Assembly (NCBI GenBank): GCA_965202585.1
Contig: OZ241826.1
Coordinates: 42,284,001-42,348,000 of the forward strand
Direction: 5' to 3'
Length of the DNA: 64,000 nt
DNA from: Thalia democratica
Taxonomy: Eukaryota
Notes under the pieces: generated by a model
Databases searched by the model: none
What the model saw: the letters and a program-made list of their open reading frames with translations, nothing else
Told to the model about the DNA's origin: nothing
Part shown: in pieces, positions 24,078 to 63,900 of the stretch
How the letters are laid out: each line of letters starts with the position of its first letter
Position numbering within the stretch: position 1 is the stretch's first letter
Translations under genes and position numbers: made by a program

Positions 24078-24983
24078 TTAAGAAAGTACGTGGCACTCCG
24101 ACGAGTTCGAGTATCCGTTGGTCTGGCTGCCCGACAACTGCGCCCCCTGCTGGTACGGGTAACTCGGTTGCGAGCACGGGAAAGTCCCCTGCTGCTGGGT
24201 GGCGGCCAGTTGAGACTGGGCTGCCATCTGAGAGTGCTGGTGGTGGCGGAAGTAGCCCTGGCTCATCATCTCGTCCACTCCCTGGTAGCCCGTTGGCATG
24301 TTGTAGTTTGCGGCCTGGTCCAAGGCGTTGAAGTAGGCCTGGTGGGCGTAGCTGTGAGGGTAACCCCCCGCGTTCATTTGCCCGCCCTGCATGTACTGGT
24401 GGGCGTTGGAGAACTGGTTCACCGCCGCCGCCAGGTACGGAGAGGTGCTGGTCCCGGAAGCGGAGCTGGACATCCCGTAGGCCGACATCGGTGTTCCTGT
24501 GCTCTCGCCGTTCGAGTTCGGAGAAATGGAAGAGTTGTTCCACATGCCGCTCGATGACTGTGACGTCATAGCCATGTTGGCGCTTCCCTGTTGCTGCATC
24601 ATTCTGATCATGTCGTTCTGCGGGCCGACGGAGGAGCTGGTCGGAGGAGGCGGGGTGAGTTTGCTGGTCCCCATGACTTCCGTTCCCAAGGAGAGCTGCA
24701 CGTTGCTAGGGGAGTTGTTTTGGAGGATCTCGGGGCTGCCGGAGACTTTCATCTGATCCTGCTGGGGTTGGAAATCTAGTTCGAGGCTGTCGGCAGGTTT
24801 GCTGGTTGGCTCGAGCCGACCGATGCTGACCGGCGACACCTGCTGGTTTGTTGCCGGCTTGCTGTGCTGCTGTGGCTGCTTCTCAACCTTCTTCTTGCTG
24901 CTGCTTGCCGCAGCTGACTGTTCCTTTTGCTTTTGCTGCTGCGACTGCTGCCTGCACTTTGCGCGACGGTTCTTGAACCAGAC
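24078..24983 (-). CDS. otx: Otx-A coding exon 4 (recognition helix and C-terminal region)
   Basis: Acceptor ctttcag|GTC TGG TTC AAG AAC; 906 nt open to TAA; Gln/Ser/Pro/Tyr/Met-rich with GC-ending codons. Confidence 0.97.
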   Translation of the reverse strand, partial: VWFKNRRAKCRQQSQQQKQKEQSAAASSSKKKVEKQPQQHSKPATNQQVSPVSIGRLEPTSKPADSLELDFQPQQDQMKVSGSPEILQNNSPSNVQLSLGTEVMGTSKLTPPPPTSSSVGPQNDMIRMMQQQGSANMAMTSQSSSGMWNNSSISPNSNGESTGTPMSAYGMSSSASGTSTSPYLAAAVNQFSNAHQYMQGGQMNAGGYPHSYAHQAYFNALDQAANYNMPTGYQGVDEMMSQGYFRHHQHSQMAAQSQLAATQQQGTFPCSQPSYPYQQGAQLSGSQTNGYSNSSECHVLS

Positions 24984-25621
24984 CTGAAAGTACAATCACT
25001 TTAGTTTGGTGTACTCAAAAATTTCTAATCAGAAATTATGTATTTTTAGTTGTGTTTTAGGTTAAATTATTTCCTTGCTCTAACCTGAACGCGAGATTCC
25101 GGAAGATTTATTTTCAAAGCGACCTCTTCTCTCATGAAAATATCCGGATACCTCGTTTTAGCGAACAACTTCTCGAGAATGTCCAGCTGAGATCTGGTGA
25201 AAGTTGTCCTTTCTCTGCGTTGTTTTCTCGAGTTTCCTGAAAAACAAAAACAGTAATAAAAAATATTCCAATGCTTATGAGAAAACATGATGTTCAAGTA
25301 TTTTTCAAACAAGCAACTCACCGTAAACATGTTGTGGCATGAACGCCATTGTTTTAGCCGCTTGAGCATGCATTCCAGGAAACCTTTGGAAGTAGCAGGC
25401 AGGGTCGTCTGAAGAAAATAAAAATTAAACAACTATGCACTAAACAAATAACAACTTTTAAAACAAATAAAACCTTATAATTTCTTAAAATCAACATGAA
25501 ATTAAGACAAATTAAACAACAACTCACTGTGGTAAGGCACGAGAGGATGGGTGAGCGAGATGTCGGGGTGGTTGAGCGAGAGACCGGTGTATCCGTTCAT
25601 TGCGGGTTTCAAATATGACAT
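24078..25621 (-). CDS. otx: Otx homeobox transcription factor (Otx-A), 4 coding exons: 25621-25528, 25408-25322, 25236-25085, 24983-24078; 412 aa
   Basis: Exon lengths 94+87+152+906=1239 nt join in frame through GT-AG introns of 119, 85 and 101 nt. The homeodomain [48 protein letters not shown]|[13 protein letters not shown] is Otx-type with K50 and has the conserved PRD-class intron between Q46 and V47. N-terminus is MSYLKP. Stop TAA at 24078-24080. Confidence 0.97.
25085..25236 (-). CDS. otx: Otx-A coding exon 3 (homeodomain residues up to Q46)
   Basis: Acceptor tttttgtttttcag|GA, donor CAG|gttaga; encodes [12 protein letters not shown]...PESRVQ. Confidence 0.97.
25322..25408 (-). CDS. otx: Otx-A coding exon 2 ([28 protein letters not shown])
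   Basis: Acceptor ttttcttcag|AC, donor G|gtgagt; 87 nt, phase 1-1, in frame with both neighbours. Confidence 0.9.
25528..25621 (-). CDS. otx: Otx-A coding exon 1 ([31 protein letters not shown])
   Basis: ATG at 25621; upstream acceptor tttgccttcag|G (AG at 25639-25640); donor A|gtgagt, phase 1. Confidence 0.92.
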
Positions 25622-32161: not shown

Positions 32162-32250
32162 TTGGCAACCAGCTGTTGCTAGCAACCGCCCCGTCGCTTT
32201 CTGGTTGCGAGCGATGACGCGGTTGTCAGGTTTCTGGTTGCCTGGCGACC
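32162..32250. promoter_or_regulatory. Candidate RFX X-box cluster upstream of Otx-A
   Basis: TTGGCAACC (32162), the perfect palindrome GTTGCTAGCAAC (32175-32186) and GGTTGCCTGGCGACC (32236-32250) in a CpG-rich island. Confidence 0.5.
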
Positions 32251-35200: not shown

Positions 35201-38200
35201 ATAATAAAAATTTTAAAGTCGGCTGTTTGCTGTTTTCTCGAGGGTAGATAAGGCTTGGACATCAAAAAACTATATTGCTGACAGTTTTTAGAATAAAAAA
35301 TACTTAAATACTATTATTTATTTGTTCATAAATTGTGGTTTTTTTGTAAAATAAACTAAAAACTTAACTATATAAAGGTAAATACGGCATAATCAATTTC
35401 ATACTTTATTAAAGTCAATTACAAGTAACAAAATGTTTAACTTGGATTGTAAGTTAAATTTTTCTTTTAAGTTTAAACACTAAAATTTTACAAACTTCTC
35501 TAGAATCTTGTAAAACTTAAACTTTTAGTTCGCTAATTTTAATGTTGACAAAATAAGTAAAAAAAAGCGTTTCATGCAAACAAAGGTATCGATCACAACT
35601 TGTAGTTTTTGAGTATATTTTGGTTTTTAATTTTCAACATCATAAGCTTTAATCTGTTTATTGTTTAAAAAACATAACATCTTTTTTATTTCAAAGCTGC
35701 TTTGATTAATTAATTCAGCGTGATAAACCTAACAAGAAGCCCACAACTCAACTTTTTTCTAATTAATCAGACAGCCGTAAAACCGGCAAAGTGTTTACAG
35801 TAAATTGCCTTTCATGATTTGACACGTCGCTATATAAAGCGCTTTAATTTTAGCACAATGTAGTAGTCATAACCGTTTGTTAGGACTCGAACGCAGTAGG
35901 GGGGCTTGAAAGTTGGAAACAGTGAACAATTGAAGTCAAAAGGATTAAAATGGCCATTAATTTTCAGTCATATACTTCTATTGATAGACCGAAACTTTCA
36001 TTGAGTTTTGTGTTGCTTGCGTCAAGATTTGTATGCAGAAAAAACGTCTTTTTAAGCTGCAAAAATACTCAAAACTAAACATCTTAAATAGTGTTAAGCT
36101 GTAAATACGTACATTATTTATCTAACAGTATGGATTTTTAAGTTTCAAAATATAAAAATTCAAACTATTTTGTGACTTGTTTGAGAAAACTATTTGCTAT
36201 GAATTTTACAACACGAAACTCTTACTCAATTTTTACAGTAGCTTTCTTTTGTAGCTACTTGAAACAATTATGAAAATGTCAGATTTAAAAGTTGCATCGC
36301 ACGCGACTATATCCACTTAAAACTATTAAAAAATGCTCGCAACTTAAAAGTGGATCTTTTAAAGGTTATTTCGCGGACCAATTATAAAAAGTAAAACTTC
36401 AAACAAGCTTCATCTATTATGACTACTCAAAAACAAGGCTCCTTATACATCACTTCATGAGTGTGTCATTTTACAAATCATTTAATTGCAACTATTCTTT
36501 GTACAAATTATAAGTTCCTGATGTTTCGAACCATATTATTATAATTTTTTCCAAACGTTATATTTTTTGAACTGACTTTATGTAATCGGCTTTTAATTTA
36601 AAGTTAACATAAAAAGTCCAAAGCGCTTGTTTTGGTTGCTTAGCAACGTGTAACTACTAGCAACGCCACCAGTCTGCGGGTCACAGCCAGCACAACTATC
36701 AATCAACGTCTCTCGAAAGTGACAAGATTCTTGTTTTTGTGACAAGCATGTTTATTGAGTAATCGCACTTTTGGGACTACACCAGTCTATTTTTGTTTAC
36801 GGTTAAATAAAGTTAATTAAACGAAGTATGGTATCGGTTCCAGAGTCGTACGTAATTATTTCCAGTCATTTTAAATTAGTTCTCATTAAGTTTAAAAAAA
36901 GATTTTTGGTAAAAATGAAAAAGATCATTACCAAACTAATTAGAAAAAACACAATTATACTCGCTCTAAAGTTAAAGTTGTTAAGATTAAAGATATTTTA
37001 AAAAATAATAGATAACTTATTTTTCGTGAAAAAATAGCAGGTTATGAAAAATAAGTTATTCTATATAATAATGTAAAGTCAAAAATATCAGTTAAAATAA
37101 ATCATAAAAAATCTGCTAGTATATCAAGCAATTCTAAAAAAAAGTACAACAAAACTTAAATGAAAGCTATCTTGACAATGACTAGTTTAAAAAATTCAAT
37201 TAATTTAAAATTAAAATACTAAAAATATTAAATTCTGCTTAAAAATTTGGCCCTAACTAAAATTTTAAATCTAATAATTTCTATAAATATTCAAAGCAGT
37301 AACATAAAACATGTTTATGATAACTATTAACAAAAATTAAGCTAACATACATTTTATACCTTGTGATTTTTACAATGTACACCATATTTTGTAAACCATT
37401 ACTGATAGCTTTGAAATCAACTTGTAACAATTTTTTTTAAACTAAACTATATTTACAAAAATTTGCATCCTCACTATCTTAGCAAATCAAGCAAAGCAAC
37501 TTTAAAAAAAAACTCACATCAACGAGTACTGGAAAGCAACGAACACACATAGCATGAGAATCGCAGCAGATGCCGCCGTAATGAGCAGCGCAGGCGGCAG
37601 GAGATCTGTTAAATCTCGTTGAGAGGATTAAGAGGTTGAGCATCGTTGAATGCATGGGAGATACTTCGGTTGGCGCGCAACGGTGACCCCTGAGATGTGA
37701 CGCGCGGAATCCCGTTAAAATTGGATTCGAAGCGCAAGATAGCTTTGTCCAGGGATCGCGCGGTTGGAGTAAACAACAAAGGATTGGATTACACGCTCGC
37801 AAAAAATTCCATGTTTTTAGTCTCAGTGTTGAAAATCAATGCGCTCTTGGTTTTCATATTCAGCAGAGTTTTCGGGCAAATTAAGTTTTCTTTGAGTACA
37901 AAACAAAATCTTATTTTGAATACGTCACTTCGAAATGCGCTTCCTTTAACTTTACTGGCTCATGAATGAAATGATTTATTCAAAACAGTTGGGCTAAATT
38001 AGCAGTGTGACTTTAATCCTTTTTATTGATATCTGGTAAAATCCGCAGTGACGCTAAAAAGCTTTTAGGGTGTAAAATCAATTTTACATTTTCAAAACTA
38101 AAAACTTTTCAGCTGAAACTGAAATTAAGCTTTGTGAACCAGTAAGATCTCTTAACATATTTAACTAATCAAGTCTTATTTGTTCTAAGTGCGGAAATAA

Positions 38201-41200
38201 CAATTAAATCTTTAATATAAGTTTGAAAAAAATGACTTTTTAGATTAGCTAGTATGTAACTTTGTCTTGTAAAAGTTTTAATTTACTTTAAAAGTGCAAG
38301 TATTTTGAAAATTTTCAACTATTACCAACTAAACACAAAAACATGAAAAGTTTTTAGTACTAGTGATATTTTAATAAGAACACTTTGATATTTTTTGCTG
38401 AATTGTTTGTTTGAATTGCTAAAATTAAAAGATAAGCTGTGTCATTGTTAAATGTTATATAAAATACTTATTTTTTATTTATTTTGTAAACTAGTTTATT
38501 CACTAAGCATAACTTGTGATTTTCAAAAGTTTAAAACATAACTTTTAATAAAGATTAAACTATCCTTGCGACAGTTTTATAGTATTCAAGCATTTAGACA
38601 AAATAAGTGCGGTATAAGTTCAATTATAAGCTCGATTTTAGCTAAATACAAATAAAAACGAATAAAAAACTTTATAAGACAAATAATCTAGAAAGAAATA
38701 AAACAGCAAACCATGCGTTCTACAACAACAAAAAAAATCTAGCATGAAAGCTAACAGATAGCTCATAAACAAATGAACACATTTTATTATGTGCCACTAC
38801 TACTTTAGAAACTAACAGCATGACTAGAAAAAGCATATATTCAAGAATAAAAACTATAATAAATTTGCCTGGTGCTAAAAGAAGAAGAAAAACTTAATCT
38901 TCAGGGCAAGAGTAATCCGCTCAACCTCACAACTGCCAATGTTTAATTCAGCCAACTCAGTTTGTCATGTTCTACTGAGTTTAGTTTAAACAAAAATAGT
39001 TTGGGCAAGTATCGTTTATTGTTTATTTGATAACCCAAAAGTGTCGCACTAGATAGTTTTGAAAGTTCGATTTTACGTGGTCTTTATCATACACGAATTT
39101 AGTAGTGTTTACAGTCATAAGATTACGCTTTAAGTAAACTTATATAAAAACTAGGATTACACAAATGTTAAAAGTAGTTTAGCTTTGAAATTTCTTTTAC
39201 ATAAAAGGAAAACTGTTAATATTACTGCCTGTTAAAGTTTTAGCCATTTTGTTTGAAAGATATCAAGTTGTACATTTTTTGCTTCTGTGAATCTAGAAAG
39301 AACGTTTTAACTATTTTCTTAATATAAAACTTGTTACACTTACATAAAATAACATTGTGGAACTTTAATATGGTTTATTCAATGATTTTTTGAATTTTGC
39401 AGACGACCTGTGTACATGATTGATACCATGAATATATTAGTACAACAGTTTTCTCAAAATTATTCTTAAAGCACTAAAATTAGTATAGCTTGAACTATTA
39501 AATCATAAGTCTGGACGCTAAAACAAAAAAAAATCAGCATTTTCATTTGAATACTTTGTAATAAGCAAAACAGATAATTTTTATCTAGTTAGTTTAAATT
39601 TTAAAACCTTATGATTTTAGTATTTTTTTTTATTAATGCAAGCCTTACGAAAAAAAATTGCAGGCCGTTTAAAAACTTTAGCATGTTGAAATTTATTAAA
39701 CTTTAAGGTAAACTATATTTTGTACATTAACTCAATAAACTTAAATATCACTCTATGTCAAAACGTTAAAGCAATTAAAAACTTATCTATATGCGAAGAA
39801 TTTTAAGTGATATAATATTTCGATACCCATTGTTAAAGCTAAATGATAACTTGTAAAATTTGTTTTATAAACATTATCATTCAGCCACGAAATCTTTTAA
39901 TTGAAAATTAATTAAAAAACTTTTGTATATTGAATATAAATCAAATACATATTAAAGAAATTACATTTGTTATACTTTAATAAACTAAATTGGCAACTAT
40001 TTTAATTTAATGGTGGTTAGCAATGGTGAATTGATTATACAAAAATTTTAGGTTTGTCATCTTTACTTTCAAGGTTTGTTTTTGTGTTTACAGTATTTTC
40101 CTCGACAGAACCTCATATATTTTATTGAGGTGGTAAACATCATGAGTGACATACGTTGAATATATTCAACTAATTGTTTTAAAAAGGGGTTAAAAGTGTC
40201 AATCTTGCTTAACAGTGCAAGGCACTAAACAGAACAAAGTATCTGGTATTTACATACTTGTGCCATTTCTACCGTTTTAAAAATAATCATTTTATAAATA
40301 AATCCGTGTAACTGGCGTTTTCAAACACTTTAACATGATTAATTTCTATATTTATGTGTATGTGACATTTAACTGTCAAAATTTGTTTAAAATGCATTAA
40401 ATACCGACAAAAATTAGACCGCAAGTGCAAATAAAACACTTTTAATCCTTTATTTTGTGTCCAGCTACCAGTTTGCAAGTTAAAACAAGCTGTTTTTCGA
40501 TATTTCTAAGTATAACGTACTTAGCTAAAGCCATATTTATAAAACTTCTATTTAACCGCAGAGTTCTACCATAAATAAGTTTTAAGATGAAGAAACAACA
40601 AAAGTTTGTAATTAATCAAAATTACCTTAACTGTCCGCAGGTGAAGTGTTGGTAACATAAACATGCGCTTGTCGTGTTTACAAAACTTTTATTTTTTTAT
40701 TTTTTGAGTTGGTTTAAAATGTAACTTTTTTAATTTTTCTTTGAGTTATTACTCATGATAAATGCTTTAAGCACGCTGTAAGATAGTTGAAAAACAGCGT
40801 AAGGATAGTTATTGTTAGATAAAACAAGCAAAAAAAGTTTGGGACACAGTTTTTAGTAAAATTGCAAGATTTAAAATATAAAATTTATAAAGTGCTGTTA
40901 TCAAAATAACTCTGAAGAAACTAAAATCATGACTAATAGACTAGTCTTTTTATGTATTTTTATCAATTTAAAAAATAAAAAAGATTTAACAGTATGAAAC
41001 AGTGCATATTTCATGGTCATTATAAATAAGATATATCAGTCCGATACGATATAGTTTTTTGTATTTTGAAAACAAAACTGGTTTTTGAAATTAAATACAA
41101 AACTCTGTGTGCACACAAATACAAATTGTATTTAAAGCCTTTAATTTTACACTGTTTACGGTTTGTTTTACCGAAAATTAAAAATATATATACATAATTC

Positions 41201-45900: not shown

Positions 45901-48900
45901 AAAAAACTTAGTTTGCGAAATAACATCGGTAGCAAGCACGCTTTAATTATTTATTTTATTGTTTCAGCAGATTAAAACAACTTTTTCAGCGAGCGTATTT
46001 GTTGTGACTACCGGCAAATATAAGTTAAGCAAATTAATTAAGCTTCGTGTTTATTTGAAAACACGTTTTTAAATAAACCAACGAAACTGACCGGTTATTT
46101 TTAGACTTTTTTTGCTAACTTCGAATAAAAAGTAGCGGTCTGCATTAAATTTACAATTAAAACGACAGGCCGCTGCAGAATAACAATTAAATTGATTGAA
46201 ATTAACATTAATATCGTCTGCGCGAGCGCGACCGGAAACCTATGAAAGCGAAAAAAAAAAACTGCAATTAAAAATTTCAAAGTCGCCAAACCTTCAACTA
46301 TTTTTGGCCGAACAAAAAGTTGAAGGTAGCGAAATAAATCGGGGTTTCCGATCGCAACTGCCATCGAACGCGGAAGGAACCCCACACGCGCAAGCTGCGC
46401 AGGTGGCTACTACAGTTTGTTTTCAATTCCTCTTATAACATCTGTCGCACTTGTTAGATTGCGCAGGTCGCCACAACAAAGCGATCAAAAAAAGCTTTAA
46501 CGGCAACTGAATTTTTGCGCACAAAAACTACTACTGTGTGCAGTTTTTCTCGAGCGGCGCACTGAAAGGTCTGATCACCAATCAAAGATGACGTTTCATC
46601 GCGTCGGCGCTTCAATCATCGAGAAACAATACATATTCACAACACATGGAGAGACATGATGTAATTTAATTAACTTGGCATTCCAGTGTCTCAAATTGCC
46701 ACCGCAACGAAAACCCAACTTGAATTTCCAACCAAATACATCTCGAATCTCCAGTTCAGACTTGCAGGCGTCTGACAGTGGAAATTTCTCAATCGTTCTG
46801 AATGGCGAACTTGAATCGGGTGAAGTGCAGTTTCAATGGAGGCAGCAGCACAAGTAGGCAAGAGTGACCACTCAAAAAAACTGCAACTTTGCGCACCGAA
46901 CATTTTCTCAAAGCTGCAACAGCACAGAGATGTTTTCACTTGAAAGACAAGTGCTTTGGAAGCGAGCGATTTTCCACCGAATTGTTCTCAATGCGGATTG
47001 ACATTTAAACAATCTTCAAGTTAAATTTTGTTTGTTATTTTCAATGGAAACCATCTCAGTGATTAGACTTGTCGAGCTGTCATGACAAATTTGTAATTAT
47101 TGGATGATCCGAGCCGCTCCGTCAAACATTGTGACGCAACAGCAGTCGATTGTGACGTAAACAACAAATTATTGGATGAGAAGTTGAACAATTGACTTTC
47201 GCGTAACTCGCAAATCGTGTGTATGAGGTTTGTTGGAAATAACAAATCATCGATGTAAAAATTACCTTGAGAAAAGTAAAAAAAATTGAATAATAATCAA
47301 AAAAATAGTTCAGTGATATTAAGTTTTTTTAATAAAACTTGCTTGATTTAGCTTTATGGTGGTAAATTTGCATGCGAAATGAAAAAATTCCGTGCAAAAT
47401 TGAAACGTTACAAAGTTTTGAAGGAAATTTGAAAGAGATTAGTCACGCGCTTAATCTGCTAATTACAAATTTTGTTTACCGTTTGATTAATCGCACGGCC
47501 CAAATAAAAAGTTCAAATGACCCAACACCTTTTGTTTTTCCTTTCCTTGAAATTTTTGAATTTTTTCCTTTGCAGAGTGGGTTCAGAAATTGGTCGAAAC
47601 ACAATGCGAGAACAAAGCATTTAACAGATAAAAATCTTAAACAGAAAATCTAGATGAATTTGTTGTTAAAATGTTTCCCAAAACACCTTTGTCTTAAGAA
47701 ATTACGAAAAACCAAGGCATACTTTAGTATATGTTCATAAATATTCCGTTACAACTTAAAGTAAAAGTTGACAGCTTGACTACTACGTTTGGACAAAATT
47801 TACTATTTTATACTAAAGTACAACCGAAAAAAAAAACAATCATCTAAAAACTTAGTTTAAACTTTACAACTCATTGAGGCAAACTTAAGCGCGAGTATAT
47901 TCTCACACCGAATCTACCTTTCCGTGTGGATTTCCTTCAACAAACAACAAGTGAGTAGGAAAAATAACCTGAAAATCTGTCGAGAAACCAAAGTGGAAAA
48001 CACTGAAACTTTCACACACACATGTGATGGGAATTTTCAAAGAAGAGTCCCACGGTGTTGCAGCGGATTATCCTCGGTTTTGTTTTGAGAACATCTCCAC
48101 TGATCCCGCTAAGCTCCTCTAAACATAACTCGCTAATTGCCGCTCCAATCCAAACAAGACTCTCAATTCAAGTGAATTCAGAACAGTTACTTTTCACTCG
48201 CAATGTTAATAGTTTTAATTAAGATATTCATGTTTGTTTTTTTGTTTTATTTTATAATTTTTAGAGACAGATCAGAAAAGTAAATTTTCAAGGTACTGAA
48301 CTGTGCCTTTAAAACACTGAACTAAGTTTTCTTACTGAGCTACGAGGAAATTGCTAAAAAAATACAAGCACAAACAAAAAATAATACTATACTTCCTTAT
48401 TATTTTACAGACATCGTATTTTACATCATAATAATAATTAAAAATTTTCAAATAATAAGGATGACAATGTAAAAATAAACTAAAAAATTTAATAAATATT
48501 TTGTACACATCCTAAGCACGCTAATTTATGTTTCAAAAACACAAAAATTTTAACTTTGATGCCAAAAAGCCTGTACTTCGCAGGGGGTTATTGTGTGTAA
48601 AAATATTGACACTTTTCCAAGCCAGTCTTTCGAAGATATGTACAAAACAAAGGATTAATTGCTCGTTTGAGGCCGGAATTACGAACTAAAAAGTGTGTTG
48701 CCTGAGCTTAGTAAACTATGGTTTCTGTAATTCCATCAAATCCATTGTGTTTTAAATCGTAATGCTGATGATTTGACATAAAGATTAAACAGTGAATTTC
48801 GTGTTTTACAACGATTATCATTCTAATAATAGACTCACAAAAGACGCTTGTACCATTTACTAGAAGGTTTATTGAAGTACAAAAAGGTTTGGTTTTTAAT

Positions 48901-51900
48901 TGCGACTAAATTCAAAACACAGTAAAGCCTAAAGAGTCTAAAAACCAAGCTTGACAAAAAACTAATATTTTTCAAGATTTTCAGAGGTTTATTAAAAATG
49001 ACGCGTTGTGTTTCTTGCGTTTAAAAATGACGTGTTATGTAAACAAACTCAATTAACACGAGTTTTTCGATTACTATTGATTTTATATAAATTTCTACGT
49101 AGAGTCAAGTAAGCATGTAACAATGCATAGCACGAAGTAACGCAATAAAACTTTTCAGATTTCTATCAAGTGGATAATACAAAAGTCAAATTTAGTATTT
49201 AGCCAACAACTTGTGCCTGTCTCCAAAACTTTGCTTTCAAAAGCCGTTATTGTTGGCAGCTTTTTTATTTATCAAAGCAATAAAAGATCTGAGGAATTAA
49301 GCTGGGTAAAACGATTAACTTTTTCTTAATAAATAGCAGAAGACAACAATTACATCTTTTTTCTTGTAAGCGACAGCTGCTAGCAACTATTTTACTACTT
49401 AATTGATTTAGTGGATTAGGGGATTTGTAAACTTTTTGATCAGCTGTATCTGAACTTTAGCATCTGGATTTTTTGTCAGCAACAAAGACATGATTTATCA
49501 CATTTTGAGATCAAAGAAAAAAACTTTTATTCTTAACAAAGGCCACTCTCATTCCGTTTACAGAAAACCTGTGAAAAAAAAACTGAACAGCGTTTTGAGA
49601 AGGCCCACCTTTTCATAATTTTTCAAGGGGGCTAGCGTATCAAATCGGGTCTGAAAGTATAGCGACGCTGTGTTGCAGATGCTATTGATAAGCGGTGTTT
49701 AGTCAACACGACTGTAACACCTGCCGCGCTGTAACAAGTCGTGTTTCATCTCGAGAAAATTTCCTTTGAAACAAAACAACAAAAGTCACTTCTAAACCCG
49801 CACAAAAACAAATTTCTCAGGGATGAATTTTTTTGGTGATTTTTTTTTTTGAAAATAAAAGCGTGACCGTTTTAAATTAAAACAACCATCAGCAGCAGTT
49901 TTGTAAAGTTTCAACATTCGGCAGGGTCAAGGCGGGCTGCGCGGGCGGCGAAATGAAGAAGCTGATTTTAATTGGTTTGCAGCAGATAAACAGATGTAGA
50001 TGGCAGCGATACGAGCTAGTACCAAATGCAAGTAGAACAATCGAGCGCTAATTACACAAGGGTTTTGTACGTGTTGTTATAATACACAAGTCGTGACAAA
50101 AACAGAACAGAAGATTTATTGATGTGTGTTAAACATGGCTGAATTTATCGAGCTGTATTTTTTTCAGTTTTTTATAAACGGTTTATAGTTAAATTAAAAA
50201 AAAAAATCAACTTTTCATAGCTTGAAATCTTAGGTACTGAAGAAATTATTTGTAGAAATAGGAAATATATGAAACTTATAATCAAAACTAATCAAACCTT
50301 CGATGTTGGCAAACTTGTTGACTTTTCTTTCGATTTCTTCTATTTCATTGATAACTCGCTGTTCATCGTGGCTGTAAATTTAGTTGTCATTTAATATAAA
50401 GAAAATACATATAAACCAATTTGTTTTGTTTAACTTGTTTCCGTGGAGTAAGGCAAAAACTGGCTTTTATTTAACTTATAACAATACACTTATTTACAGT
50501 GTTAAAAAGTAAAATAGTAAAAGCCTAATAGTCTAGTATACATTTTAATCAGTAAATAACACAGCTTTCAGAAGTGGTCACAAAATTTGCATCGTTAAAA
50601 ATTTACAAAACCATAAATTCAAATTTTCGGAAACTTCTATTAATTACAACCCATTAAAACTTTAAATAACTGTATACACTACATATTTATACCACACAGC
50701 TTTTAAAAACCAATTAAGAATTAAGTTACTAAAGTACTTCGGGGTAAAATAACTTTCATGCGGGTTTTGTTTTGAATAATCTAAGATTAAAATCCCTACA
50801 AATCTTAGGAAGCTACAGCTTTGAAAGATAAATGAAAGTTAGGTTTTTAGCACTTACAGTAATGATTAATTATCAATTTATTGTATAAGGTTGGCAATGT
50901 GGTTTAAATACATTTGTTTTGAATTTTAATATACAAAACTTATAACAATAATTTCAAGTTTTTGAAAATCTTGAGTTTCCTCCATTTTATAATCTAAACT
51001 TTGTAATTAAAAACATAATGACGAACTTAAATCTTTAAGAGATTAAATGATAGAAGGCTTCATTGTTTATTAAAAAAAAACTTATCAAACATATCTAGGC
51101 TAAACAACAACAAACAAACTCTTATATAAATCAACAACATGCATTTGTTCACATAAAAGCCCTATTACAACACATAAAACAATAAATTTCAAATGGTAAC
51201 TGACGCCAAGCAAAGCTGATCCTGCTGTATGACCAGCCTGTTTTTCTTGTTGACTATCTGGATCCACTCCCTCGCCAGATCTTCCTCGCGCTGCTTCATC
51301 GCCTGATTGTTCCTTCCGAACACTGTTGATGAGGTTTAAGGTAAAAATAAATTTTTTGAAGTCTATGTTGATCTAGGTTGGTTCGGTGAAACAATTTTTT
51401 TATAAGTTTATCGACGTGTAATATTTTTATGTTTTATAAATAAATGTAAGTAAAGTTTGATGGAAAAAAAAATGGTTAAAATTCTAATTTTCTTCAAACA
51501 AAACGAATGTTATATGTTTAGTACTTATAACTCTTTACTAATAAGTTCTTAGACTTTTTTGAGGAAAAACCAATTTTGTTATGATTACTCAAGAGCACTA
51601 ACAGCGATTAAAAATAAGAAAATTAATTGATTTCACGGTTAATAAACTTTGCAATCAGAACAAGAAATCTTATAAAAAGTAATCTTGCTTTTATATATAT
51701 GAACCTTAGGTTAGTTATTGCTAATGAAGAAAATAAAAGTTCTTTGTTTTAAAATAAGAATAAACATCTTAGTAAGTACAAATTGTGAAGGACAAAATAT
51801 AAATCATTGTGTTTAAGTAATTTCAAATTTATTAATAAAATTGTCAAGTGTAATGTTCTTACCATACATAACACAAGTTTAAATATTTATCTAATTAAAT

Positions 51901-54900
51901 GTTTCTTATGCAAGTACTATTTTTTAATGACAACATAATTCAAATTATAAAATAGTTTTAAAAGTCGTTAAGTTTATTATTTGTTCAAAAAAATATTACC
52001 AAGTACTGTAATTCTTCAAAAACAAAGTCAAACAGTAATAATTCCAGATTAGGCGGGCCGGTCTGTCAACAAAAGTTTAAATGGGAAAGAACCCCGAGAA
52101 AATATTCAATTGAAATTCCAACAAAAGATCAAGTTGATCCCGCATAATCGCCGAGATCACCGCCGATTGTGACGTAACAAGGCCACTCGATACTTTGTGA
52201 CGTCATAAAGCCGACGTGTTAAAACTACCTGTTAGTGAAGCGGTAAGAAATTTTTTTAAACAATTTCTTTAAAACATCATTTTCACATACACATTTGCGC
52301 AGGTAGAATCTCGATTTTTAATTAGAGGAAATCAAGCTTAATTGCAACCAGTTCGATGAGAAAGTTGGAAGAAAATCAAATTAAAGATCTCCGATTGCAA
52401 GCGGAGCGTGTAAGAATTTAATATCAATTTGTAAATTAACTTGTCAGAGTAATTGAGTCAGCAGTTGCAAAAATCAACAGAAAACAATAATACCGGACGA
52501 GAAAACCGGCGATACTTCTGATCAAAGAAGCCTCGTTTGTTCAGCCTCGGTCAACTTAGAAAGCAATTAAAAACAAACGAGGTAGACGTTCAAAAACTAA
52601 GGGTTGGAAGTCGAAAACTACAAAGAGAAAGTCGTGACGTTATCTGGACGCCGGTAGATCGAGATTAAGTTATTATCCGTTCGAATACATCAAACCGTTG
52701 TTGTTGTAAGGATTTCAAAAGCAGATAAAAAATGTGAGCTTTTATTTTCAAAAATGCAAAGCCTATTGCGAGATTGAGAAGCGAGCCGTTTAATTAGGAT
52801 TAAAATATTTAAAATTATTAAATATTTAATTAAAGAGATTATTCACAAACTTATATTTGAAATTAAATCGCGTTATGAACATATACATGATCACCACAAT
52901 ACTACTTTAAAGTGTATTTTTTCAGCTGCCAATAAAATTTAATAAATTTAAAAACTGACAGTCATAAACAGTTTTAAAAAAATTATTTAAATCGTCCAAA
53001 AAAAAATATGAAAAAAACTATACAAGCTATTTCATGAATACCTTTTTACAACCGTTTGCAAAAAACTGACATCATAAATAATCTTACATCAGTCATTTTT
53101 AATTTCAGTCTAAATAAAGCACATAAAGTCTGCTCATTTTTGATTGAAGCCTTGTTATTAACACGAGGGCTGTTTGTTGTGGAAGCTTGTAATTTATATT
53201 GAGTCTGCTTCAAATAGACTGTGAGGTTTACCAACCAACTTACAACGAGTCAATCAGTTTTAATTTGAATGTGTATGCGTGCGGTGGTCAGTTTGGTTTG
53301 AATTGAAATGTTTGATTTGTTGTAAAAAAAATAAATTTTTTGAACCCAGCAAAGGTTTTTGGTTAGCCACAATGACAAATTTAGTAGTAAAACCAATGCG
53401 TTTGTATATTAGTATACATGTTTTTAGTTCGTAACTGTATTTACAAAACAGATCAGTTTGTAAAAGTAACTTAATAACTTACTTACAAAGTAAAAACATA
53501 AGATTTAAGCTTTTTGAATAACGCCACATTCGCAGAATAACGTTTAGCTATTATTTCCAAAACACACTTTTAAAACTAACAAATTCTAATTGTTAATTAG
53601 TATTTTGCGGCTTTCAAAAGCGAACACTTTGACACTGAAGGTTGCTATTTTTACACTCGTGAAATATACAAACACCGATACAGAAGTGTTTTGTGTTGGC
53701 ACTATTGAGTGGCACTTACTGTCGCCCGCGTGTCTGCACGTTGAAACCCATCAACGGCCCTCAATGCTAACAACTACTTGCACGAATAACTGAAGCAAAT
53801 AAAAAAATTGTACACAGTCTTTCTCTTGAAGCTTCAACCAGACTATCAAAGCATCAAAGCTCAACATTTTAAACTGCTTAAAAAAGCCCTTTAGAGTTTA
53901 AATCAGCTGTTAGTTAAATTTAAAGCACGAGCCGCTCGAATGTACCAAGTTCAAATGGATTACAACGCGCACAGATAACTTATCTGCGGGATGAGAACTG
54001 AACTACATTCGTAATCCACCGTCGAATCCACTTTCAACTGCAAACGCGACGAGATAATATTTCTAAGCCAGGCATTAGCGCGGGGCCGGGCGTTAGAAAA
54101 ACGAGCGGATCCGGCGAAAAGGCGCGAAAATCCGGGGCTGCAAGGGGATGATGCCGTGGCAACCATCTACTTTGGGGGGAGATGAGCATAAGGGTCGCGT
54201 GTGATAATCCCGCACATTGAAATCCCACCATACTGATGCGAGTGCAGGGGATTATAGAGGGCGGCACATAAGGCAGATATGCACAAGCAAATAGGATTAG
54301 TTGTTGTGAGCATTATACATCTCTCTCTCTGTATAATATATGCGCAGTGCGAAGCTTTCGCGATGAATGAAAACTGAAAAGGATTAGCGCTTTCAAAGCG
54401 TAACGCAGAAGCTTTCCAACCTTTTTGAGTTTTTCGTTTTGCACACGCCATCGATATGTATGGATTTTTAAGCATATTTTGTTGCAGCGCATTGGGGGTT
54501 GAAGTAATGTAAACTTCTGCCAGCTCAAGGAAACGTTTTTTTTTTTTCACTGAAAGAGTTTTTGTAAAATTTTCTAATGGTAAACAATTTACAGTTTTAT
54601 GAAATTATTAAAGAATCCATTTACTGGCGATACTTATACTTATAAAATACTAATATTTATTTATCTATATATAGCAATGGTAAACTTCATAAAAAAAACT
54701 TCAAGAGGTAACTTCGTAGAAAACACTCTATACAGTGCAAATAAGTATTTAGAGACAGAGCACTTGAGAACGAGTTTCAACTATAAAAAGTATTACGGCA
54801 CCGAGTTATAAATAAACATTTAATATAAAATTTCCAACAATACACACAAGCCAATTACGCTCAGGGCGGCAGTTGCAAGCCAGCCCCGTAACCGGCTTAA

Positions 54901-57900
54901 GCCCGGCCCCGAAGCACAAATATGAAAGAAATCGAAAGTGGATTAACACGACCACATAACCGACGCTATGGGTGGTCTCCATGACGTAACACAGAAGTAT
55001 TGTGACGTCACGTTTGTTAAGGGTTGTGGTGGCGAATCGGATTATAAAAATAGACTGGTAATTAATGGACGTGAAAAACGAAAATTTTCTTATACATATG
55101 CTCCAAACCCTGCCCGAAAGCTGTCCGGCAGTTCATAGAAAGTCGATTGAATGGAAAAGTATGAATGAAACCCGTTAAGGATTAAAGCTAGTAATTTTGA
55201 TTGTTTGGAAAAAAATTATGATTTTCAATAAAGTAAGTTATTTATCATAGCTGAAAAGTAGAACTAAACGGGCGTGACAAGGTAAAAAATTTAAAGGCAA
55301 AAAAAAACTAAATTGGTGCTTAAAATAAATTTCAAACAATTTGCAACTCGAAGCACAAAAGAAAACACTCACAAAAGTCAACGCACTGATGTGTGTGGTG
55401 AAAAAATTTGAAAATTGCGACAGGCAATTTGGGTCGAAATTGCGCGTCGTATAGCCGAAAAGTGGGGGCCATTTAGGGATTTGGTTGGCGAGATGGCAAA
55501 TTGAAAAATTCTGCACGAAAGTCACGACACCGTGGGCACGCAAGCCGTAAATTGCAGCGAAAACAATTGTTTGCGACGTGATGGGGATTATAGGGCAGTG
55601 GCAATTTGCAGTTACTGTTACGAAAATGATAAAGTTTGTTTGTTTGAAAGCGTGGTGAGGTAATGGCAAATCATGCTTTTTGTGAAAAGTGCTGAGATAT
55701 TGTAAGTTGAGATTTTTCAATGTTTTTTAGTTGAAATACAATGGCTTTTTGTTGCGCAGTTTTTATGTTAGAAAACATACAAGTAAAGTTTTATTTGAAT
55801 ATTTGATTTTGTTTCAATAAAGCTGCTTACACAAAACTTGACCAGCAAACACTTCTCGCCGTACAATAGGAAAATAACATATAAAACATTAAAAGCTTGT
55901 TTTATATCGTTGAATTATATATATACATACATATTTTATTAGTGTTTATTAGTATGGAGTATGTAGGTTATCAATTTTCAATGTTTTTACATATTTGTTT
56001 TTCTGTTCATACTTTATTTTACTTTTATTTTCTTATAAATGTCATTACTTGTAAAACTTAAAAACGTCTAATTCAAAACTAAAAAATTAATAAGTATTAC
56101 TTAAGAGTATACTTACTTATAGATAACTATATAACAGCTATTTCAAACTCTTAAAATATTAACTTAACTAATAGAGAGCTTTAAAAGCGTGAGGTAAAAT
56201 TACAAAGCAGATTGCGTAGATTAAGTAATAAGCGGTTATATACTTTCTTAGCTTAACTTATACGTTATAAATTAGATTTAAAACAGCTTATAAATACAAA
56301 ACGCATTAAAAAGCTTTATGCCTGGCTTTTGAAGAAAAAATCTTTCTATGATTGTACGCCACTTAGCGGTTAATAAATTTTACGCCAAGTTTGTATTTAA
56401 TGTTATTATATTAAAAATAAAAAATCAAACTTGCAATTTAGCTGTTTGACAAAGAATTAAATAATAATCAAAGTTTTTTAAATATCCTTGAGTAAGTTTT
56501 AAAAAATAAATCTGTTATGAAGAAGATTCGAAAAAAAGTTTCCTTAATTCTAGATAAAAAAAAAACTAAGCTAGCTCAACAAAAAACTATCTTAAAGATC
56601 TTTAACAGAAGTAATAAACTGAAACAAACTTTTTGGTTGTTTTATTTGCTGCAGTTCCATTTGAACCTCGGCAGACCTTTCTTCTATTTCTTGAAGTTCG
56701 TTGTCTAACTTCTGTTGCTGGGCTTCCAACTGTAAATTATTAATACTTGATAAATATGTAAAAACTAACCAAATGATTATTCAAAAAATTCACAACTAAC
56801 AACACAAAAGAATATCAGCCGTTTGACAAACAGGGTCTTTTATAAAAATAAACTGAAATTTAGTACCATAAAACTTTAAAGACATATAAAAACGGTATCT
56901 TCAACAAAATATTATTCACGCACAGCAGCAACGGGAGTGATGTCGATGTTGGCCTCGTCCTCCATGATTTCCTCCGCGTTCTCGATACCCATGATCCTGC
57001 TCAGCCTCTTCACCAGGTTGGCGTCAGCTTGCGACAGCGGCCTCGATTTACGGACGCTTCCTGTCACAACCGAACATCAGTTATCGGGTGTTGTAAACAA
57101 GCGTGGCAGTGTTGATGGTTTTTATTATTTTACGTATAATAAAAAACTGTTAAAAGGCCATAATAAACTAGTTTTAATTATGCATTTAATATTTTGTATT
57201 CCGTAGAAAAATAACTAATTTACGTATTTGTTTATTTTTTAAGTCCACATTAGGGTGCATCTGTTGCCCTAATGTTGCCCTAACCTTAGAAATTCGCTTA
57301 GTAAAATTTTTTGACGTTGGAAAATCACATAAATAGACAGCACAAAAAAATAGCTTCCTAGCTTTAAGCCTGTTGGAGCAAACTACTTTTGAAAATAGTT
57401 TTAAAAAAATTAGAAATTAAAAAATTTAAAAAAATAAAAAGTAACTTAGTTTTTTTGTTATTTTTGCATAAAATTTTTAATTTATTTTACAATTTTGTTT
57501 ATACAAAATTTTCTAAATATTGCAAGGAACATTTCCTAACCGTTTAAGGAAACTATCTCAAAAAATGTAGGAGAAAATATTTTTTTAGTGAAATAGTCAT
57601 CTTTCCTCTTTTTAAATATACCGATATAAAGCAAAATGTTCAAAAGTAGTTTGCTCCAACAGGCTTAGAGCTAAGAAAATATTTTTTTGTGCTTTTTTAT
57701 GTGATTTCCAAACGTCAAAAAACTTTACTAAGCGAAATTCTAAAATTTTCATTTTCGAGGGACAACATATGCTCCCTAGTACACATAAATGTGCCTTTAC
57801 TTTTTATTTGCAATGTAAATTTTTGAAAATGGTAATAAATATCTAAATATGATTAATTATTATTTCAATGTTTATAAACACTACAAAATAATTATTTTTT

Positions 57901-60900: not shown

Positions 60901-63900
60901 AGCTTCAAGTATTTCCTCGATCTGATCGTTGGAAACCGAGTTCCTGTTGCTTTTCTCATCAACCTCTGACGCGGTGGCTTGCGAATCCGACTCGAACTCT
61001 TTGCACACCGCCTCCATTTCGCTTATGACGTCATCGCAAGTTAATATTTCCGATGATTTCTCATCACTGACAATCGCATCAGAAGCACTTAATTCAACTT
61101 GCGTGTCGAGCAAAGTTTCGACGCTGTTTTCAATTTCCAAATCTTGGCTGGGAATTGCAACGTGGTCGGGTGACGTTTCACTTTTGAATGGGTTTTCATG
61201 AGTGTCGTTGATTTCAGTTCCTTTCGATTGGCTCTTTACTGAACTTTCGTCGTCAGAAATGTCATCCATATAGGATGTAGCTGCTTTAACATGCTCAGTT
61301 TGACTTTTACACAAAAAATGCGAAAACGTAAAGAACACTTTTACAAACACGTTTATATCACTTTAAGTGTTACGCCAGTACATAAATACTCTTTTTGATG
61401 TGTAACAACATTTAGACGCTATATAATGAAACAAAAAGTAAAAAAAAACATACAAGTATTAACTTAACAACTTACTAGACTCAATTTTATTATCTGTAAA
61501 ATCTTCTTTTTCAATGGATTTCCTTGTTTGTGAAATCAACATGTGCGCTCTTTCTCTTATTTTTCTTTTTCTTTCCAGTTCCTAATTATTAAGTTATATT
61601 AATTTTACTACTGAGGTTAATACAAAAGCTTTATGATTGCAATTCTGTTTACTTTTTACAAAATTTTTTATAACACAAGTTTAATATTTCATAAAATTTT
61701 AAAATACATATATACCAAAAAATATTTAAAAAGATCATATAAAAAATTAGCTTTCAAAATTTATTTCAGGTAATAGGTCAGACATTATTAAGGTAAGAAA
61801 TAATAAAAAATTATCATAACTTTAAAATGTCTTTTAAAAACAAAAACATATTCACTACAATAGAAACAAAAACCTATAAGTTGGTGAAGCGAAAAATTTC
61901 TTAAATAAGTAACTTCATCTATCGACCAAAATGTTCGAAACCGTTACAAAACTTTAAACTGCTAAGAAAAAGTTGTTTCTTTTATGTCGTGTTTTTAATG
62001 AGACTAGTGTCAGGAATAATTTTATAAAAACAGTTCACAGAAATTTACACAAAGTTTTCACGAAATAAAATTATCATATCTTAAGTTTTCTTGACTTTGA
62101 CAGCCAAAATTTATCTGACGCTAATTGCCCGTAACAACCATCAAAGCGATTCTCAACTTCAAAACGTACCAAGCAGACCACCTATTTAAATAAATTAAAG
62201 AGAAAATATTTGAAATGTTCCTTGAAAACAATGTGCTTATTTTGGGAGCTATCGCGATGAAGGTGGCTTATCTGACGACTCTTTGCTTTGGCAGGGCCTT
62301 CAAAAGACCCGCGTTGCTTTTCCCGCGCAAACTCGAGTCGCGCGCACCGCGTCTCAGCAAACAAATTATGCGCTGTTGATTGCGACACTTCAGTGCACTT
62401 TCGCCGACTAATTGGTCACGTGATGTGCGAGCGAAAGCATCCGTGCCCAACTGTAAACATTCCGCGCAGATAAAAATGTATCCATTGTTTCAATTGTAAA
62501 CATTACTGTTGTTTATGGTGAATTCGCGTTAGTAAATGTTTCTAAGCTTAAAAAAAATACTACTATATATTTCATTTTTCAATATGCTAACGTTTACTTT
62601 GTTAGGCGAAACTTATAACAAAAAAATATATATAATCAAATTTAGATTTTAAAACTTTTTACCTCATCATCTATTTCTTCATTATTTTCCTGCAAAGCGT
62701 TAGCTTTCTTAGCTTTTTCTAGAAGTTCCATTATTTTTGATTTTTTTGTTCTTTCTCTTGCTGAGTCCTATAAAAAATATTTTCTTTTTCATAATTAATT
62801 AGATTTTTTAAGTGAAATACTTGTTATAAATATTAATTATAAAGTATTTTTAAATTGGTTTTAACACTGTACATTAATGACAAAACAATGACAAAACTAT
62901 CTCAAAACTTCTAATATGAGTACTTTAAAATATAGTTATCATAAACTAACAATCAAATTGTTCACAGTGTCATCAAACGAGGCATTGGAACAAGTCTCAT
63001 CATTTTTTGAGTTTTCTGAAATATTTTCTGATGATTCAGCGCTATGCACAGATATGGCTTCTTCATTCTTTATAAAATAAGTTTATATAACGTTTGTATG
63101 ATTTTAATTAAATTACGTAAAAAGAACGCTTAACAGCTATTTTCCACGTTTAACAATATCATTTTTATTCATTAACTTTTTTAAACAAAAGCAAAAAGTT
63201 TTTTACCAAGTATGTATTGTGAAAAAAAAACTTACATGGCCATTACGTATAATTGTGCAACTTTCTTTAACATCTAAATTCGTATCTTTATTAGAATCAT
63301 TGATACAAAACGTGCTTAAATTGTTATTTTCTAAATTAGTTTCACTAGTTAAATTATTGTTTTGTTTATCATCTAACTCTTCGTATATACCAACATCTTT
63401 TTCATTAGTTTCAGAAGTTTCAACGTAAGTTTTGGTTTCTTCACCACAATCACCCAGCTCTCTGTCACACTCTAGCGGTTGTACTTCTTCATTTTTATTT
63501 ATTGAAATACTTACAGATTTCAACTCCATACTGACTTCAAGCGGTTGAATTAATTTAATTTTTTCTACCGAAACTTTTTCAGGAATTTCAGGTTTTTCAG
63601 CGGGTTCCGCTAAAATTTCGGGTGGAGTGATTTTTTCAAGCAGATTTACGATATCAGGTTTTTCTTGAACTATTTCTTTATTATTGTATTCAATTTGTTC
63701 ATCAACTGCTGTCGACGGAGACTCTTCAACCTGGCTCTGTGACGTCACGTTCACGGGAGAAAGTCGTTGTGACGTCACTGGCCGGTCGTCGAACGAGTCG
63801 CACTCCTCCTCACTGCACTCGTACCGGAGGAGGGCCGAGTCGAGATCGCGCTCGAATATGTCGTCACAATCGTCGTCGTCATGGTTGCCAGGCAACGTGA

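What the first reader, a model, noticed from the sequence alone, without database searches (positions are those of the whole stretch)
53845..55593. Ten Otx-type binding sites in one intronic island: candidate auto- or cross-regulatory hub for the Otx pair
Seen: 10 GGATTA/TAATCC hexamers in about 1.65 kb, against roughly 1 expected by a hand estimate at about 42% GC. They include the identical 11-mer GGGGATTATAG at 54247 and 55583. The cluster is preceded by tandem ATCAAAG (Tcf-type) sites at 53845 and 53853 and contains a CRE (55003) and an X-box-like site (54150). Known: K50 homeodomains (Otx, Pitx, Gsc) bind TAATCC. Inference: Otx proteins feed back on their own cluster through an element 28-30 kb upstream, buried in the bystander gene.
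Basis: partly seen in the sequence, partly recalled or inferred. Interest (0 to 1): 0.7.

Follow-up and report, generated by a model that had tools for sequence, protein, structure and literature searches.

The report
Conserved Otx-site cluster in Ehbp1 intron
A 1.7-kb non-coding stretch inside an intron of the neighbour gene Ehbp1 carries ten binding-site cores for Otx-type proteins, all kept in a related salp, so it is very probably a distal control element of a known kind, most plausibly one through which Otx acts on its own genes, though binding and target are untested.

Summary
There are ten GGATTA/TAATCC hexamers at 53957-55590, where about 1 is expected. None of 20,000 local shuffles or 1,500 window-wide scan shuffles reached ten. 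GGATTA is the most clustered of all 2,080 hexamers in the window.

The stretch is single-copy, non-coding and matches no Rfam family. It lies in the middle of a 5.3-kb intron (51323-56629) that splits the bMERB domain of an Ehbp1-like gene. It is 28-30 kb upstream of the Otx-A start codon.

Using chance ORFs in the island as protein queries, I recovered marine-metagenome contigs from two related taxa, about 10% and 12% divergent. All ten hexamers are intact in the nearer taxon and in the second haplotype, and 3 of 4 in the farther taxon (P about 0.012). The GC-rich blocks diverge about half as fast as the rest.

A composite, ATGAAWGAAA-N8-GGATTA, occurs three times in the 801-Mb genome, all three here.

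Best reading: a three-module distal regulatory region read by K50 homeodomain proteins, inside the known Otx-Ehbp1 regulatory block. Otx as binder, Otx as target and the sign of the effect remain inferences. It is a new member of a known kind. The scan's earlier notes on this window agree on the Ehbp1-Otx setting.

The parts
53845..55593 (.). The island as given: a single-copy, non-coding stretch with ten K50 homeodomain site cores
53950..54475 (.). Module A: a GC-rich (47%) conserved block with 6 GGATTA and 10 GGATT cores, plus an X-box-like site at 54150-54164
54840..55200 (.). Module B: a conserved block with 3 GGATTA, two CRE-type sites and a TATA-like run. It has no substitutions between the two haplotypes
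55400..55625 (.). Module C: a conserved block with GGGGATTA at 55583, an invariant GGGATTTGG at 55475 and repeated GCAAWT/AWTTGC words
53957..53962 (+). K50 site 1 (GGATTA); intact in the haplotig and taxon T
54012..54017 (-). K50 site 2; intact in the haplotig and taxon T
54205..54210 (-). K50 site 3; intact in the haplotig and taxon T (two contigs)
54249..54254 (+). K50 site 4 (GGGGATTA); intact in the haplotig and taxon T
54294..54299 (+). K50 site 5; intact in the haplotig and taxon T
54363..54386 (+). Composite ATGAATGAAA-N8-GGATTA, copy 1 (holds K50 site 6 at 54381). Kept in taxon T; the spacer is 1 nt shorter in the haplotig
54922..54945 (+). Composite ATGAAAGAAA-N8-GGATTA, copy 2 (holds K50 site 7 at 54940). 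Invariant in all four sequences
54982..54989 (.). CRE-like TGACGTAA; invariant in the haplotig and taxa T and E
55003..55010 (.). Palindromic CRE TGACGTCA; invariant in the haplotig and taxa T and E
55039..55050 (+). K50 site 8 (55039-55044), overlapping a TATA-like TATAAAAA (55043-55050) that lies 33 bp after the CRE
55161..55184 (+). Composite ATGAATGAAA-N8-GGATTA, copy 3 (holds K50 site 9 at 55179). Kept in taxon T; both halves are changed in taxon E (ATGAATAAAA and AGATTA)
55585..55590 (+). K50 site 10 (GGGGATTA); the core is invariant in the haplotig and taxa T and E, the 3' flank varies
53853..53859 (+). Tcf-type ATCAAAG, conserved. Its neighbour at 53845-53851 exists only in the window haplotype
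51323..56629 (-). Host intron (5,307 nt) of the Ehbp1-like gene, with a GT donor and an AG acceptor. The flanking exons join in frame (…QQIKQPK-M-FGRNNQAMKQ…)
56630..56729 (-). Ehbp1-like exon upstream of the intron (start of the coiled-coil bMERB region)
51200..51322 (-). Ehbp1-like exon downstream of the intron; matches Pfam bMERB_dom positions 27-63 at 27.1 bits (cut-off 24.6)
24078..25621 (-). Otx-A coding exons: MSYLK start near 25620, K50 homeodomain split over 25085-25222 and the start of the 24078-24995 ORF. This is the presumed target, 28-30 kb away

Best explanation
The island is a compound distal cis-regulatory region. It has three conserved GC-rich modules (A 53950-54475, B 54840-55200, C 55400-55625) separated by faster-evolving AT-rich spacers. 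It sits in the intron that splits the bMERB domain of the bystander gene Ehbp1.

Its dominant input is a homotypic set of ten core sites for K50 paired-type homeodomain proteins. Conserved bZIP/CRE, Tcf-type and RFX-like sites accompany them.

The most likely readers are the products of the two adjacent Otx genes. The most likely target is the Otx-A promoter 28 kb downstream, and possibly also Otx-B at about 53 kb, reached by looping within the ancient Otx-Ehbp1 regulatory block. That would make the element a maintenance (auto- or cross-regulatory) enhancer.

**Shown:** site excess; uniqueness in the genome; non-coding status; intronic position; retention of all ten cores in a relative about 10% divergent; lower divergence of the modules.

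**Inferred:** who binds; which promoter responds; whether the element activates or represses.
For: **Site excess.** Ten sites against about 1 expected; 0 of 20,000 shuffles and 0 of 1,500 scan shuffles reach ten. GGATTA is the top k-mer of the island in an unbiased enrichment test. All GATTA pentamers in the island are GGATTA, which is the K50-specific form.

**Not a repeat.** The island is single-copy in the 801-Mb genome apart from a 96%-identical haplotig. The modules are not duplicates of one another.

**Not coding and not a known RNA.** There are frameshifting indels between taxa, no bias in substitutions by codon position, no Pfam hit and no Rfam hit.

**Conservation.** 23 of 24 site-by-lineage comparisons are intact, P about 0.012. 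Modules diverge less than the rest: 7.1% against 12.7% in taxon T, 1.4% against 4.9% between haplotypes, and 9.1% against 14.4% in taxon E.

**Genomic setting.** The host gene has a CH domain and a bMERB domain and lies next to a K50 Otx gene.

**Precedent.**
- A zebrafish ehbp1-intron enhancer drives an otx1b-like pattern and contacts the otx1b promoter (PMC3514665).
- Ciona enhancers with 3-5 GGATTA in 273-392 bp are Otx-dependent and Otx-bound (PMC4133040).
- OTX2 activates its own distal enhancer (PMC4157845).
Against: - There are no occupancy, accessibility, contact or expression data for this organism.
- The relatives recovered are close (10-12% divergence), so the conservation test is only modestly powered. 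I drew the module boundaries partly after seeing the divergence profile.
- The flanks of the sites show no preference for the Otx optimum as I recall it (YTAATCC): 4 Y, 4 A and 2 G.
- Other K50 proteins share the core. By default, intronic enhancers often serve their host gene.
- K50-motif-rich elements can be silencers as well as enhancers (PMC8492058).
- Chance alone predicts roughly 0.2-1.3 such clusters somewhere in 800 Mb. The argument therefore leans on the cluster's position next to Otx.
Confidence: 0.45

Rival explanations
1. It is a K50-responsive enhancer, but not an Otx feedback element. Either another K50 homeodomain protein reads the sites (Pitx, Gsc or Dmbx, listed from my own knowledge of tunicate homeobox sets), or the sites control the host gene Ehbp1 or another neighbour as an ordinary downstream target.
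For: - The core GGATTA does not discriminate among K50 proteins. 3 of 10 sites are GGGATTA, the Pitx- and Bicoid-favoured form, and the flanks show no Otx optimum.
- The element lies inside Ehbp1.
- The conserved RFX-like and CRE sites would also fit a terminal sensory-cell enhancer.
Against: - Retention of Otx-Ehbp1 linkage from placozoans to humans is attributed to Otx enhancers inside Ehbp1, and zebrafish ehbp1 and otx1b expression differ (PMC3514665).
- Nothing else in this 64-kb window is K50-enriched, so the one cluster sits in the Otx landscape.
Confidence: 0.25
2. It is a K50-dependent silencer, or a negative-feedback element. Many homotypic K50 sites with few partner motifs would recruit Otx-class proteins to dampen Otx or Ehbp1 transcription.
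For: [quoted passage not shown]
- Here the K50 core dominates the motif content, and GATA and ETS words are not enriched.
Against: - Conserved CRE, Tcf-type and RFX-like sites and the composite ATGAAWGAAA partner word add motif diversity.
- Ascidian GGATTA clusters tested so far are activators (PMC4133040).
Confidence: 0.12
3. Module B is a promoter for an unannotated transcript (a non-coding RNA or enhancer RNA) on the + strand. It has two CRE sites followed 33 bp later by TATAAAAA, which predicts a start near 55075. On this reading the K50 sites are promoter-proximal inputs.
For: TGACGTAA (54982), TGACGTCA (55003) and TATAAAAA (55043) are arranged like a CRE-TATA promoter, as I recall that architecture, and are conserved in all taxa.
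Against: - No conserved ORF lies downstream, and the candidate frames carry frameshifting indels.
- There is no Rfam match.
- TATA-like runs are common in a 30% GC genome.
- No listed sequencing run that holds this stretch is on record as RNA.
- This reading explains only 3 of the 10 sites.
Confidence: 0.1
4. It is a chance or compositional cluster with no function.
For: A Poisson estimate allows roughly 0.2-1.3 such clusters per 800 Mb by chance. Genome-wide, co-oriented GGATTA triplets are no commoner than the reversed control pattern.
Against: - It lies within about 30 kb of a K50 gene, where the prior chance is about 1e-4.
- All ten cores are retained at about 10% divergence (P about 0.01), and the modules diverge half as fast as their surroundings.
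- The composite motif is unique in the genome and occurs three times here.
Confidence: 0.05

Closest known systems
Ciona Otx-dependent enhancers msxb-b6.5 and delta2-b6.5 (Roure et al. 2014, PMC4133040)
   Same: Both are tunicate non-coding elements recognised by clustered GGATTA cores (3-5 in 273-392 bp; module A here has 6 in 430 bp). In Ciona such elements are bound by Otx in vivo and lose activity when the cores are mutated.
   Different: The Ciona elements lie within a few kb of downstream target genes and combine Otx with Fox and Smad sites. This element is 28 kb from Otx itself, inside another gene, has CRE, Tcf-type and RFX-like partner sites, and has not been tested.
Zebrafish ehbp1-intronic otx1b enhancer in the Otx-Ehbp1 genomic regulatory block (Irimia et al. 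2012, PMC3514665)
   Same: The gene pair and the logic are the same: an Otx regulatory element housed in an intron of the bystander gene Ehbp1.
   Different: The zebrafish element was defined by H3K4me1, a transgenic reporter and 3C. The passages I read do not mention Otx sites in it or any autoregulation. I could not test sequence homology between the two.
OTX2 autoregulatory distal enhancer DHS 4 (PMC4157845). From my own knowledge, not checked here: the sea-urchin otx beta1/2 module and the mouse Otx2 FM enhancer
   Same: An Otx protein binds a distal element of its own locus and maintains its own transcription.
   Different: DHS 4 depends on a single high-scoring OTX2 motif and has ChIP and knock-down support. 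Here there are ten core sites and no functional data.
Homotypic K50 clusters: Bicoid-dependent enhancers such as hunchback P2 (my own knowledge) and CRX-bound photoreceptor elements (PMC8492058)
   Same: Several TAATCC cores within a few hundred bp are read by a K50 homeodomain protein.
   Different: The proteins and tissues differ. In the CRX case the same motif content can give either silencers or enhancers, so the sign of the effect here is open.

Membership tests
Homotypic K50-homeodomain site cluster (cis-regulatory module) | Site density far above the compositional expectation | tested here: met
   Ten sites against 0.9-1.1 expected. No shuffle reached ten. GGATTA ranks first of 2,080 hexamers.
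Homotypic K50-homeodomain site cluster (cis-regulatory module) | Unique, non-coding, non-repeat DNA | tested here: met
   Only the haplotig matches in 801 Mb. Frameshifting indels, no Pfam hit and no Rfam hit. The modules are not duplicates of each other.
Homotypic K50-homeodomain site cluster (cis-regulatory module) | Sites retained in related species beyond the neutral expectation | tested here: met
   10 of 10 intact in taxon T, 10 of 10 in the haplotig, 3 of 4 in taxon E; P about 0.012. Only close relatives (10-12% divergence) were available.
Homotypic K50-homeodomain site cluster (cis-regulatory module) | Occupancy by a K50 protein and site-dependent reporter activity | not testable with these tools
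   No ChIP, ATAC or reporter data are available.
Otx-Ehbp1 genomic regulatory block: enhancer in the bystander gene | Otx adjacent to Ehbp1 | tested here: met
   A K50 Otx gene lies at 24078-25621. The neighbour has a CH exon (Pfam 3e-13) and a bMERB exon (27.1 bits) on the same strand. An NT-C2 domain was not confirmed.
Otx-Ehbp1 genomic regulatory block: enhancer in the bystander gene | Element lies in an Ehbp1 intron | tested here: met
   Intron 51323-56629 has GT/AG boundaries and an in-frame exon join.
Otx-Ehbp1 genomic regulatory block: enhancer in the bystander gene | Physical contact with the Otx promoter and an Otx-like expression pattern | not testable with these tools
   Needs 4C or Micro-C and a transgenic reporter.
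Otx auto- or cross-regulatory element | Otx protein binds the element, and Otx transcription depends on it | not testable with these tools
   The only support is that the local Otx has K50 ([13 protein letters not shown]) and that the sites carry the K50 core.
Transposable element or satellite carrying GGATTA | Multiple copies in the genome | tested here: not met
   Single-copy. By contrast, most genome-wide GGATTA triplets belong to repeat families such as the GGATTAGCGAGG... family.

The most novel reading that the evidence does not exclude
The K50 cluster may be the constraint that keeps Otx and Ehbp1 linked: an Otx autoregulatory element locked inside the bMERB intron. On this reading its thrice-repeated composite, ATGAAWGAAA-N8-GGATTA, encodes fixed-spacing cooperative binding of Otx with an unidentified partner. 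That composite is found nowhere else in the 801-Mb genome. In taxon E one copy has both halves changed.
Probability: 0.1. Interest if true: 0.7.

Novelty: new member of a known kind. Interest (0 to 1): 0.4.

Why it matters
Salps develop very differently from ascidians, and their Otx genes are expressed mainly in maternal calymmocytes (PMC12994792). No cis-regulatory element has been described in the thaliacean literature I searched.

This island is a sharply delimited candidate of about 1.7 kb, with a clear mutational design: ten cores, three modules and one composite word. It could be tested by cross-species electroporation in Ciona.

If it proves to be Otx-dependent and to contact Otx, it would give a concrete mechanism, feedback housed in a bystander intron, for why Otx-Ehbp1 linkage survives even in fast-evolving tunicate genomes. 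If not, it is one more predicted enhancer.

Tried and rejected
**Reads.** So there is no read-level evidence for transcription or for population variants. No listed run that holds the stretch is on record as RNA.

**Metagenome scans.** Both scans of the JGI contigs found nothing: one with the 160-aa chance ORF, one with a 30-nt invariant block.

**Deeper comparison.** A search with the Otx last exon returned only short ENA and JGI contigs, plus Ciona savignyi OTX without genomic context. The orthologous Ehbp1 intron of ascidians could therefore not be examined. The Ehbp1 exons are too short, or too poorly conserved, to serve as queries under the length rule.

**Readings rejected.**
- Repeat or transposon.
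- Internal duplication of modules.
- Protein-coding exon.
- Known RNA family.

**Uninformative or not significant.**
- CpG observed/expected is about 1.1 across the whole window, so it says nothing about methylation protection.
- The strand bias, 8 of 10 sites on +, is not significant (two-sided binomial about 0.11, my arithmetic).
- GATA and ETS words, the inputs of the early Ciona Otx a-element as I recall it, are not enriched.
- Genome-wide, co-oriented GGATTA triplets (1,118) are no commoner than the reversed control (1,273) and are mostly repeat families.


Full report
**1. Observation**

A pattern search finds 35 GGATTA/TAATCC hexamers in the 64-kb window. Ten of them fall between 53957 and 55590, eight on the + strand and two on the - strand.

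The island 53845-55593 is 39.5% GC, and mononucleotide content predicts 1.1 sites. Twenty thousand dinucleotide-preserving shuffles of the island give 0.91 +/- 0.95 sites, with a maximum of 7. In 1,500 shuffles of the whole window, done in 2-kb blocks to keep local composition, the densest 1.65-kb cluster held at most 6 sites. GC-matched tiles elsewhere in the window carry 0.98 sites per 1.65 kb.

Among all 2,080 strand-collapsed hexamers, GGATTA is the most clustered in the window. In an unbiased comparison of the island with the rest of the window, AATCC (16 against 2.0) and GGATTA (10 against 0.76) are the top 5-mer and 6-mer.

Every GATTA pentamer in the island is preceded by G. Only 25 of 162 are elsewhere, and AGATTA is absent. 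That is the K50-specific form of the homeodomain core.

A Poisson estimate puts the chance number of such clusters in the whole 801-Mb genome at roughly 0.2-1.3. The cluster is therefore remarkable mainly because it lies next to a K50 gene.

- The shared 11-mer is not kept beyond GGGGATTA in the other haplotype or in the relatives.
- The first of the two ATCAAAG words is private to this haplotype.

**2. What the stretch is**

*Single-copy.* It matches only itself and a 3.3-kb alternative-haplotype contig at 96% identity in the whole assembly. It is therefore not a transposon or a satellite. Most GGATTA triplets elsewhere in the genome, by contrast, belong to repeat families. The three conserved blocks share only short words with each other, so the sites did not arise by internal duplication.

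*No known RNA or tested domain.* There is no Rfam match in 52000-57300. The four longest tested ORFs have no Pfam match.

*Intronic.* On the minus strand the exon 56630-56729 ends at a GT. The exon 51200-51322 follows an AG and joins it in frame. The latter exon matches Pfam bMERB_dom positions 27-63 above the curated cut-off. A CH-domain exon lies upstream on the same strand, just beyond the window. The host is therefore a CH + bMERB gene of the Ehbp1 type; I could not confirm the NT-C2 domain. The island sits mid-way in its 5,307-nt intron.

*Next to Otx.* An Otx gene lies at 24078-25621 on the same strand. It has an MSYLK start and a K50 homeodomain (…[13 protein letters not shown]). The island is thus 28.2-30.0 kb upstream of its ATG.

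Earlier notes of this scan describe the genome as that of a pelagic tunicate, with a second Otx gene at the window's start. Two Otx in-paralogues are reported for the salp Thalia democratica (PMC12994792).

**3. Comparative evidence obtained here**

No eukaryote genome collection was available. I therefore used the two long chance ORFs in the island (160 aa and 127 aa) as protein queries and fetched the contigs that carry the hits.

- Three contigs belong to one taxon, which I call T (98-99% identical to each other). Two come from one Tara Oceans run and one from another ENA assembly. Together they cover window 53419-55893 at about 10% divergence.
- A fourth contig comes from a second taxon, which I call E. 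It covers 54805-55891 at about 12% divergence.

The ORFs are not conserved as reading frames. Indels that are not multiples of three separate the taxa, and substitutions are spread evenly over the three codon positions.

All ten GGATTA cores are intact in taxon T and in the second haplotype. Three of the four cores covered by taxon E are intact; 55179 reads AGATTA there. Only 61-65% of hexamer positions in the region are intact in T. This gives P about 0.007-0.014 for 10 of 10, and P about 0.012 for the joint result of 23 of 24.

The GC-rich blocks diverge about half as fast as the spacers and flanks:

| Comparison | Blocks | Spacers and flanks | Fisher P |
|---|---|---|---|
| Taxon T | 7.1% | 12.7% | 5e-6 |
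| Second haplotype | 1.4% | 4.9% | 2e-6 |
| Taxon E | 9.1% | 14.4% | 0.008 |

The caveat is that I chose the block limits partly after seeing the profile.

The CRE pair (54982, 55003), the X-box-like site and a GGGATTTGG word at 55475 are invariant in every sequence that covers them.

**4.

The word ATGAAWGAAA lies exactly eight bases before GGATTA at 54363, 54922 and 55161. Genome-wide this 24-nt composite has five matches: these three plus two on the haplotig. The reversed control pattern has four. So every unique occurrence in 801 Mb is in this island.

In taxon E the third copy has changes in both halves. This fits a fixed-spacing composite site for a K50 protein and a partner, but I cannot name the partner.

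**5. Mechanism**

The anatomy is that of a distal enhancer region with homotypic K50 input.

- In Ciona, GGATTA clusters of comparable density identify enhancers that are Otx-bound and Otx-dependent (PMC4133040).
- Otx and Ehbp1 are linked from placozoans to humans. A zebrafish ehbp1-intron element drives an otx1b-like pattern and contacts the otx1b promoter (PMC3514665).
- OTX2 maintains its own expression through a distal enhancer (PMC4157845).

Putting these together, the most likely reading is an Otx-responsive element serving the Otx gene or genes from within the bystander intron.

The steps from 'K50 cluster' to 'Otx binds', 'Otx is the target' and 'positive feedback' are inferences. The core does not distinguish Otx from Pitx, Gsc or Dmbx. 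The flanks show no Otx optimum. The host gene is an alternative target. K50-rich elements can also be silencers (PMC8492058).

**6. Verdict**

The element is a new member of a known kind: a K50-site cluster enhancer inside the known Otx-Ehbp1 block. My confidence in the full feedback reading is 0.45. Summing the best explanation and the first two rival readings puts about 0.8 on its being a functional K50-responsive regulatory element of some sort.

Noticed in passing
window 54363-54386, 54922-54945, 55161-55184: The composite ATGAAWGAAA-N8-GGATTA occurs only three times in the 801-Mb genome (plus two haplotig copies), and all three are in this island. The reversed control pattern has four hits.
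   Followed up: partly
window 53845-53851: The first Tcf-type ATCAAAG exists only in the assembled haplotype, where it comes from a 1-nt difference. The haplotig and taxon T read TCCAAAG.
   Followed up: yes
window 19437-20322 and 37625-39154: There are two lesser GGATTA groups. Four sites, all on the minus strand, lie within 886 bp, 3.7-4.6 kb beyond the Otx-A stop codon. Five sites lie within 1.5 kb of the Ehbp1-Otx intergenic region.
   Followed up: no
L008:4846-5985 (G000:C1:42362846-42363985, about 19 kb beyond the window end), minus strand: An intronless 380-aa ORF matches glycosyl hydrolase family 18 (Pfam E 5e-16). It lies just upstream of, or nested near, the 5' exons of the Ehbp1-like gene.
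   Followed up: partly
L002 (G000:C898, 3,333 nt) = window 52352-55654, reverse strand: An unplaced haplotig, 96.2% identical. In the AT-rich spacer it shares many variants with metagenome taxon T against the window haplotype. That suggests deep shared polymorphism.
   Followed up: partly
window 10001-10500, 12251-13000, 21001-21500, 27751-28250, 30251-32500, 37501-38000, 46001-46750, 62001-62750: About ten GC-rich islands (40-49% GC against a 25-30% background) dot the Otx-Ehbp1 landscape. None of the others is K50-enriched.
   Followed up: no
P0006 (425 aa, JGI contig 1,516 nt): A full-length Otx-like protein is 75% identical to the Otx-A last exon over 99% of its length. It could be the paralogue, or an orthologue from another thaliacean in a marine data set.
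   Followed up: no
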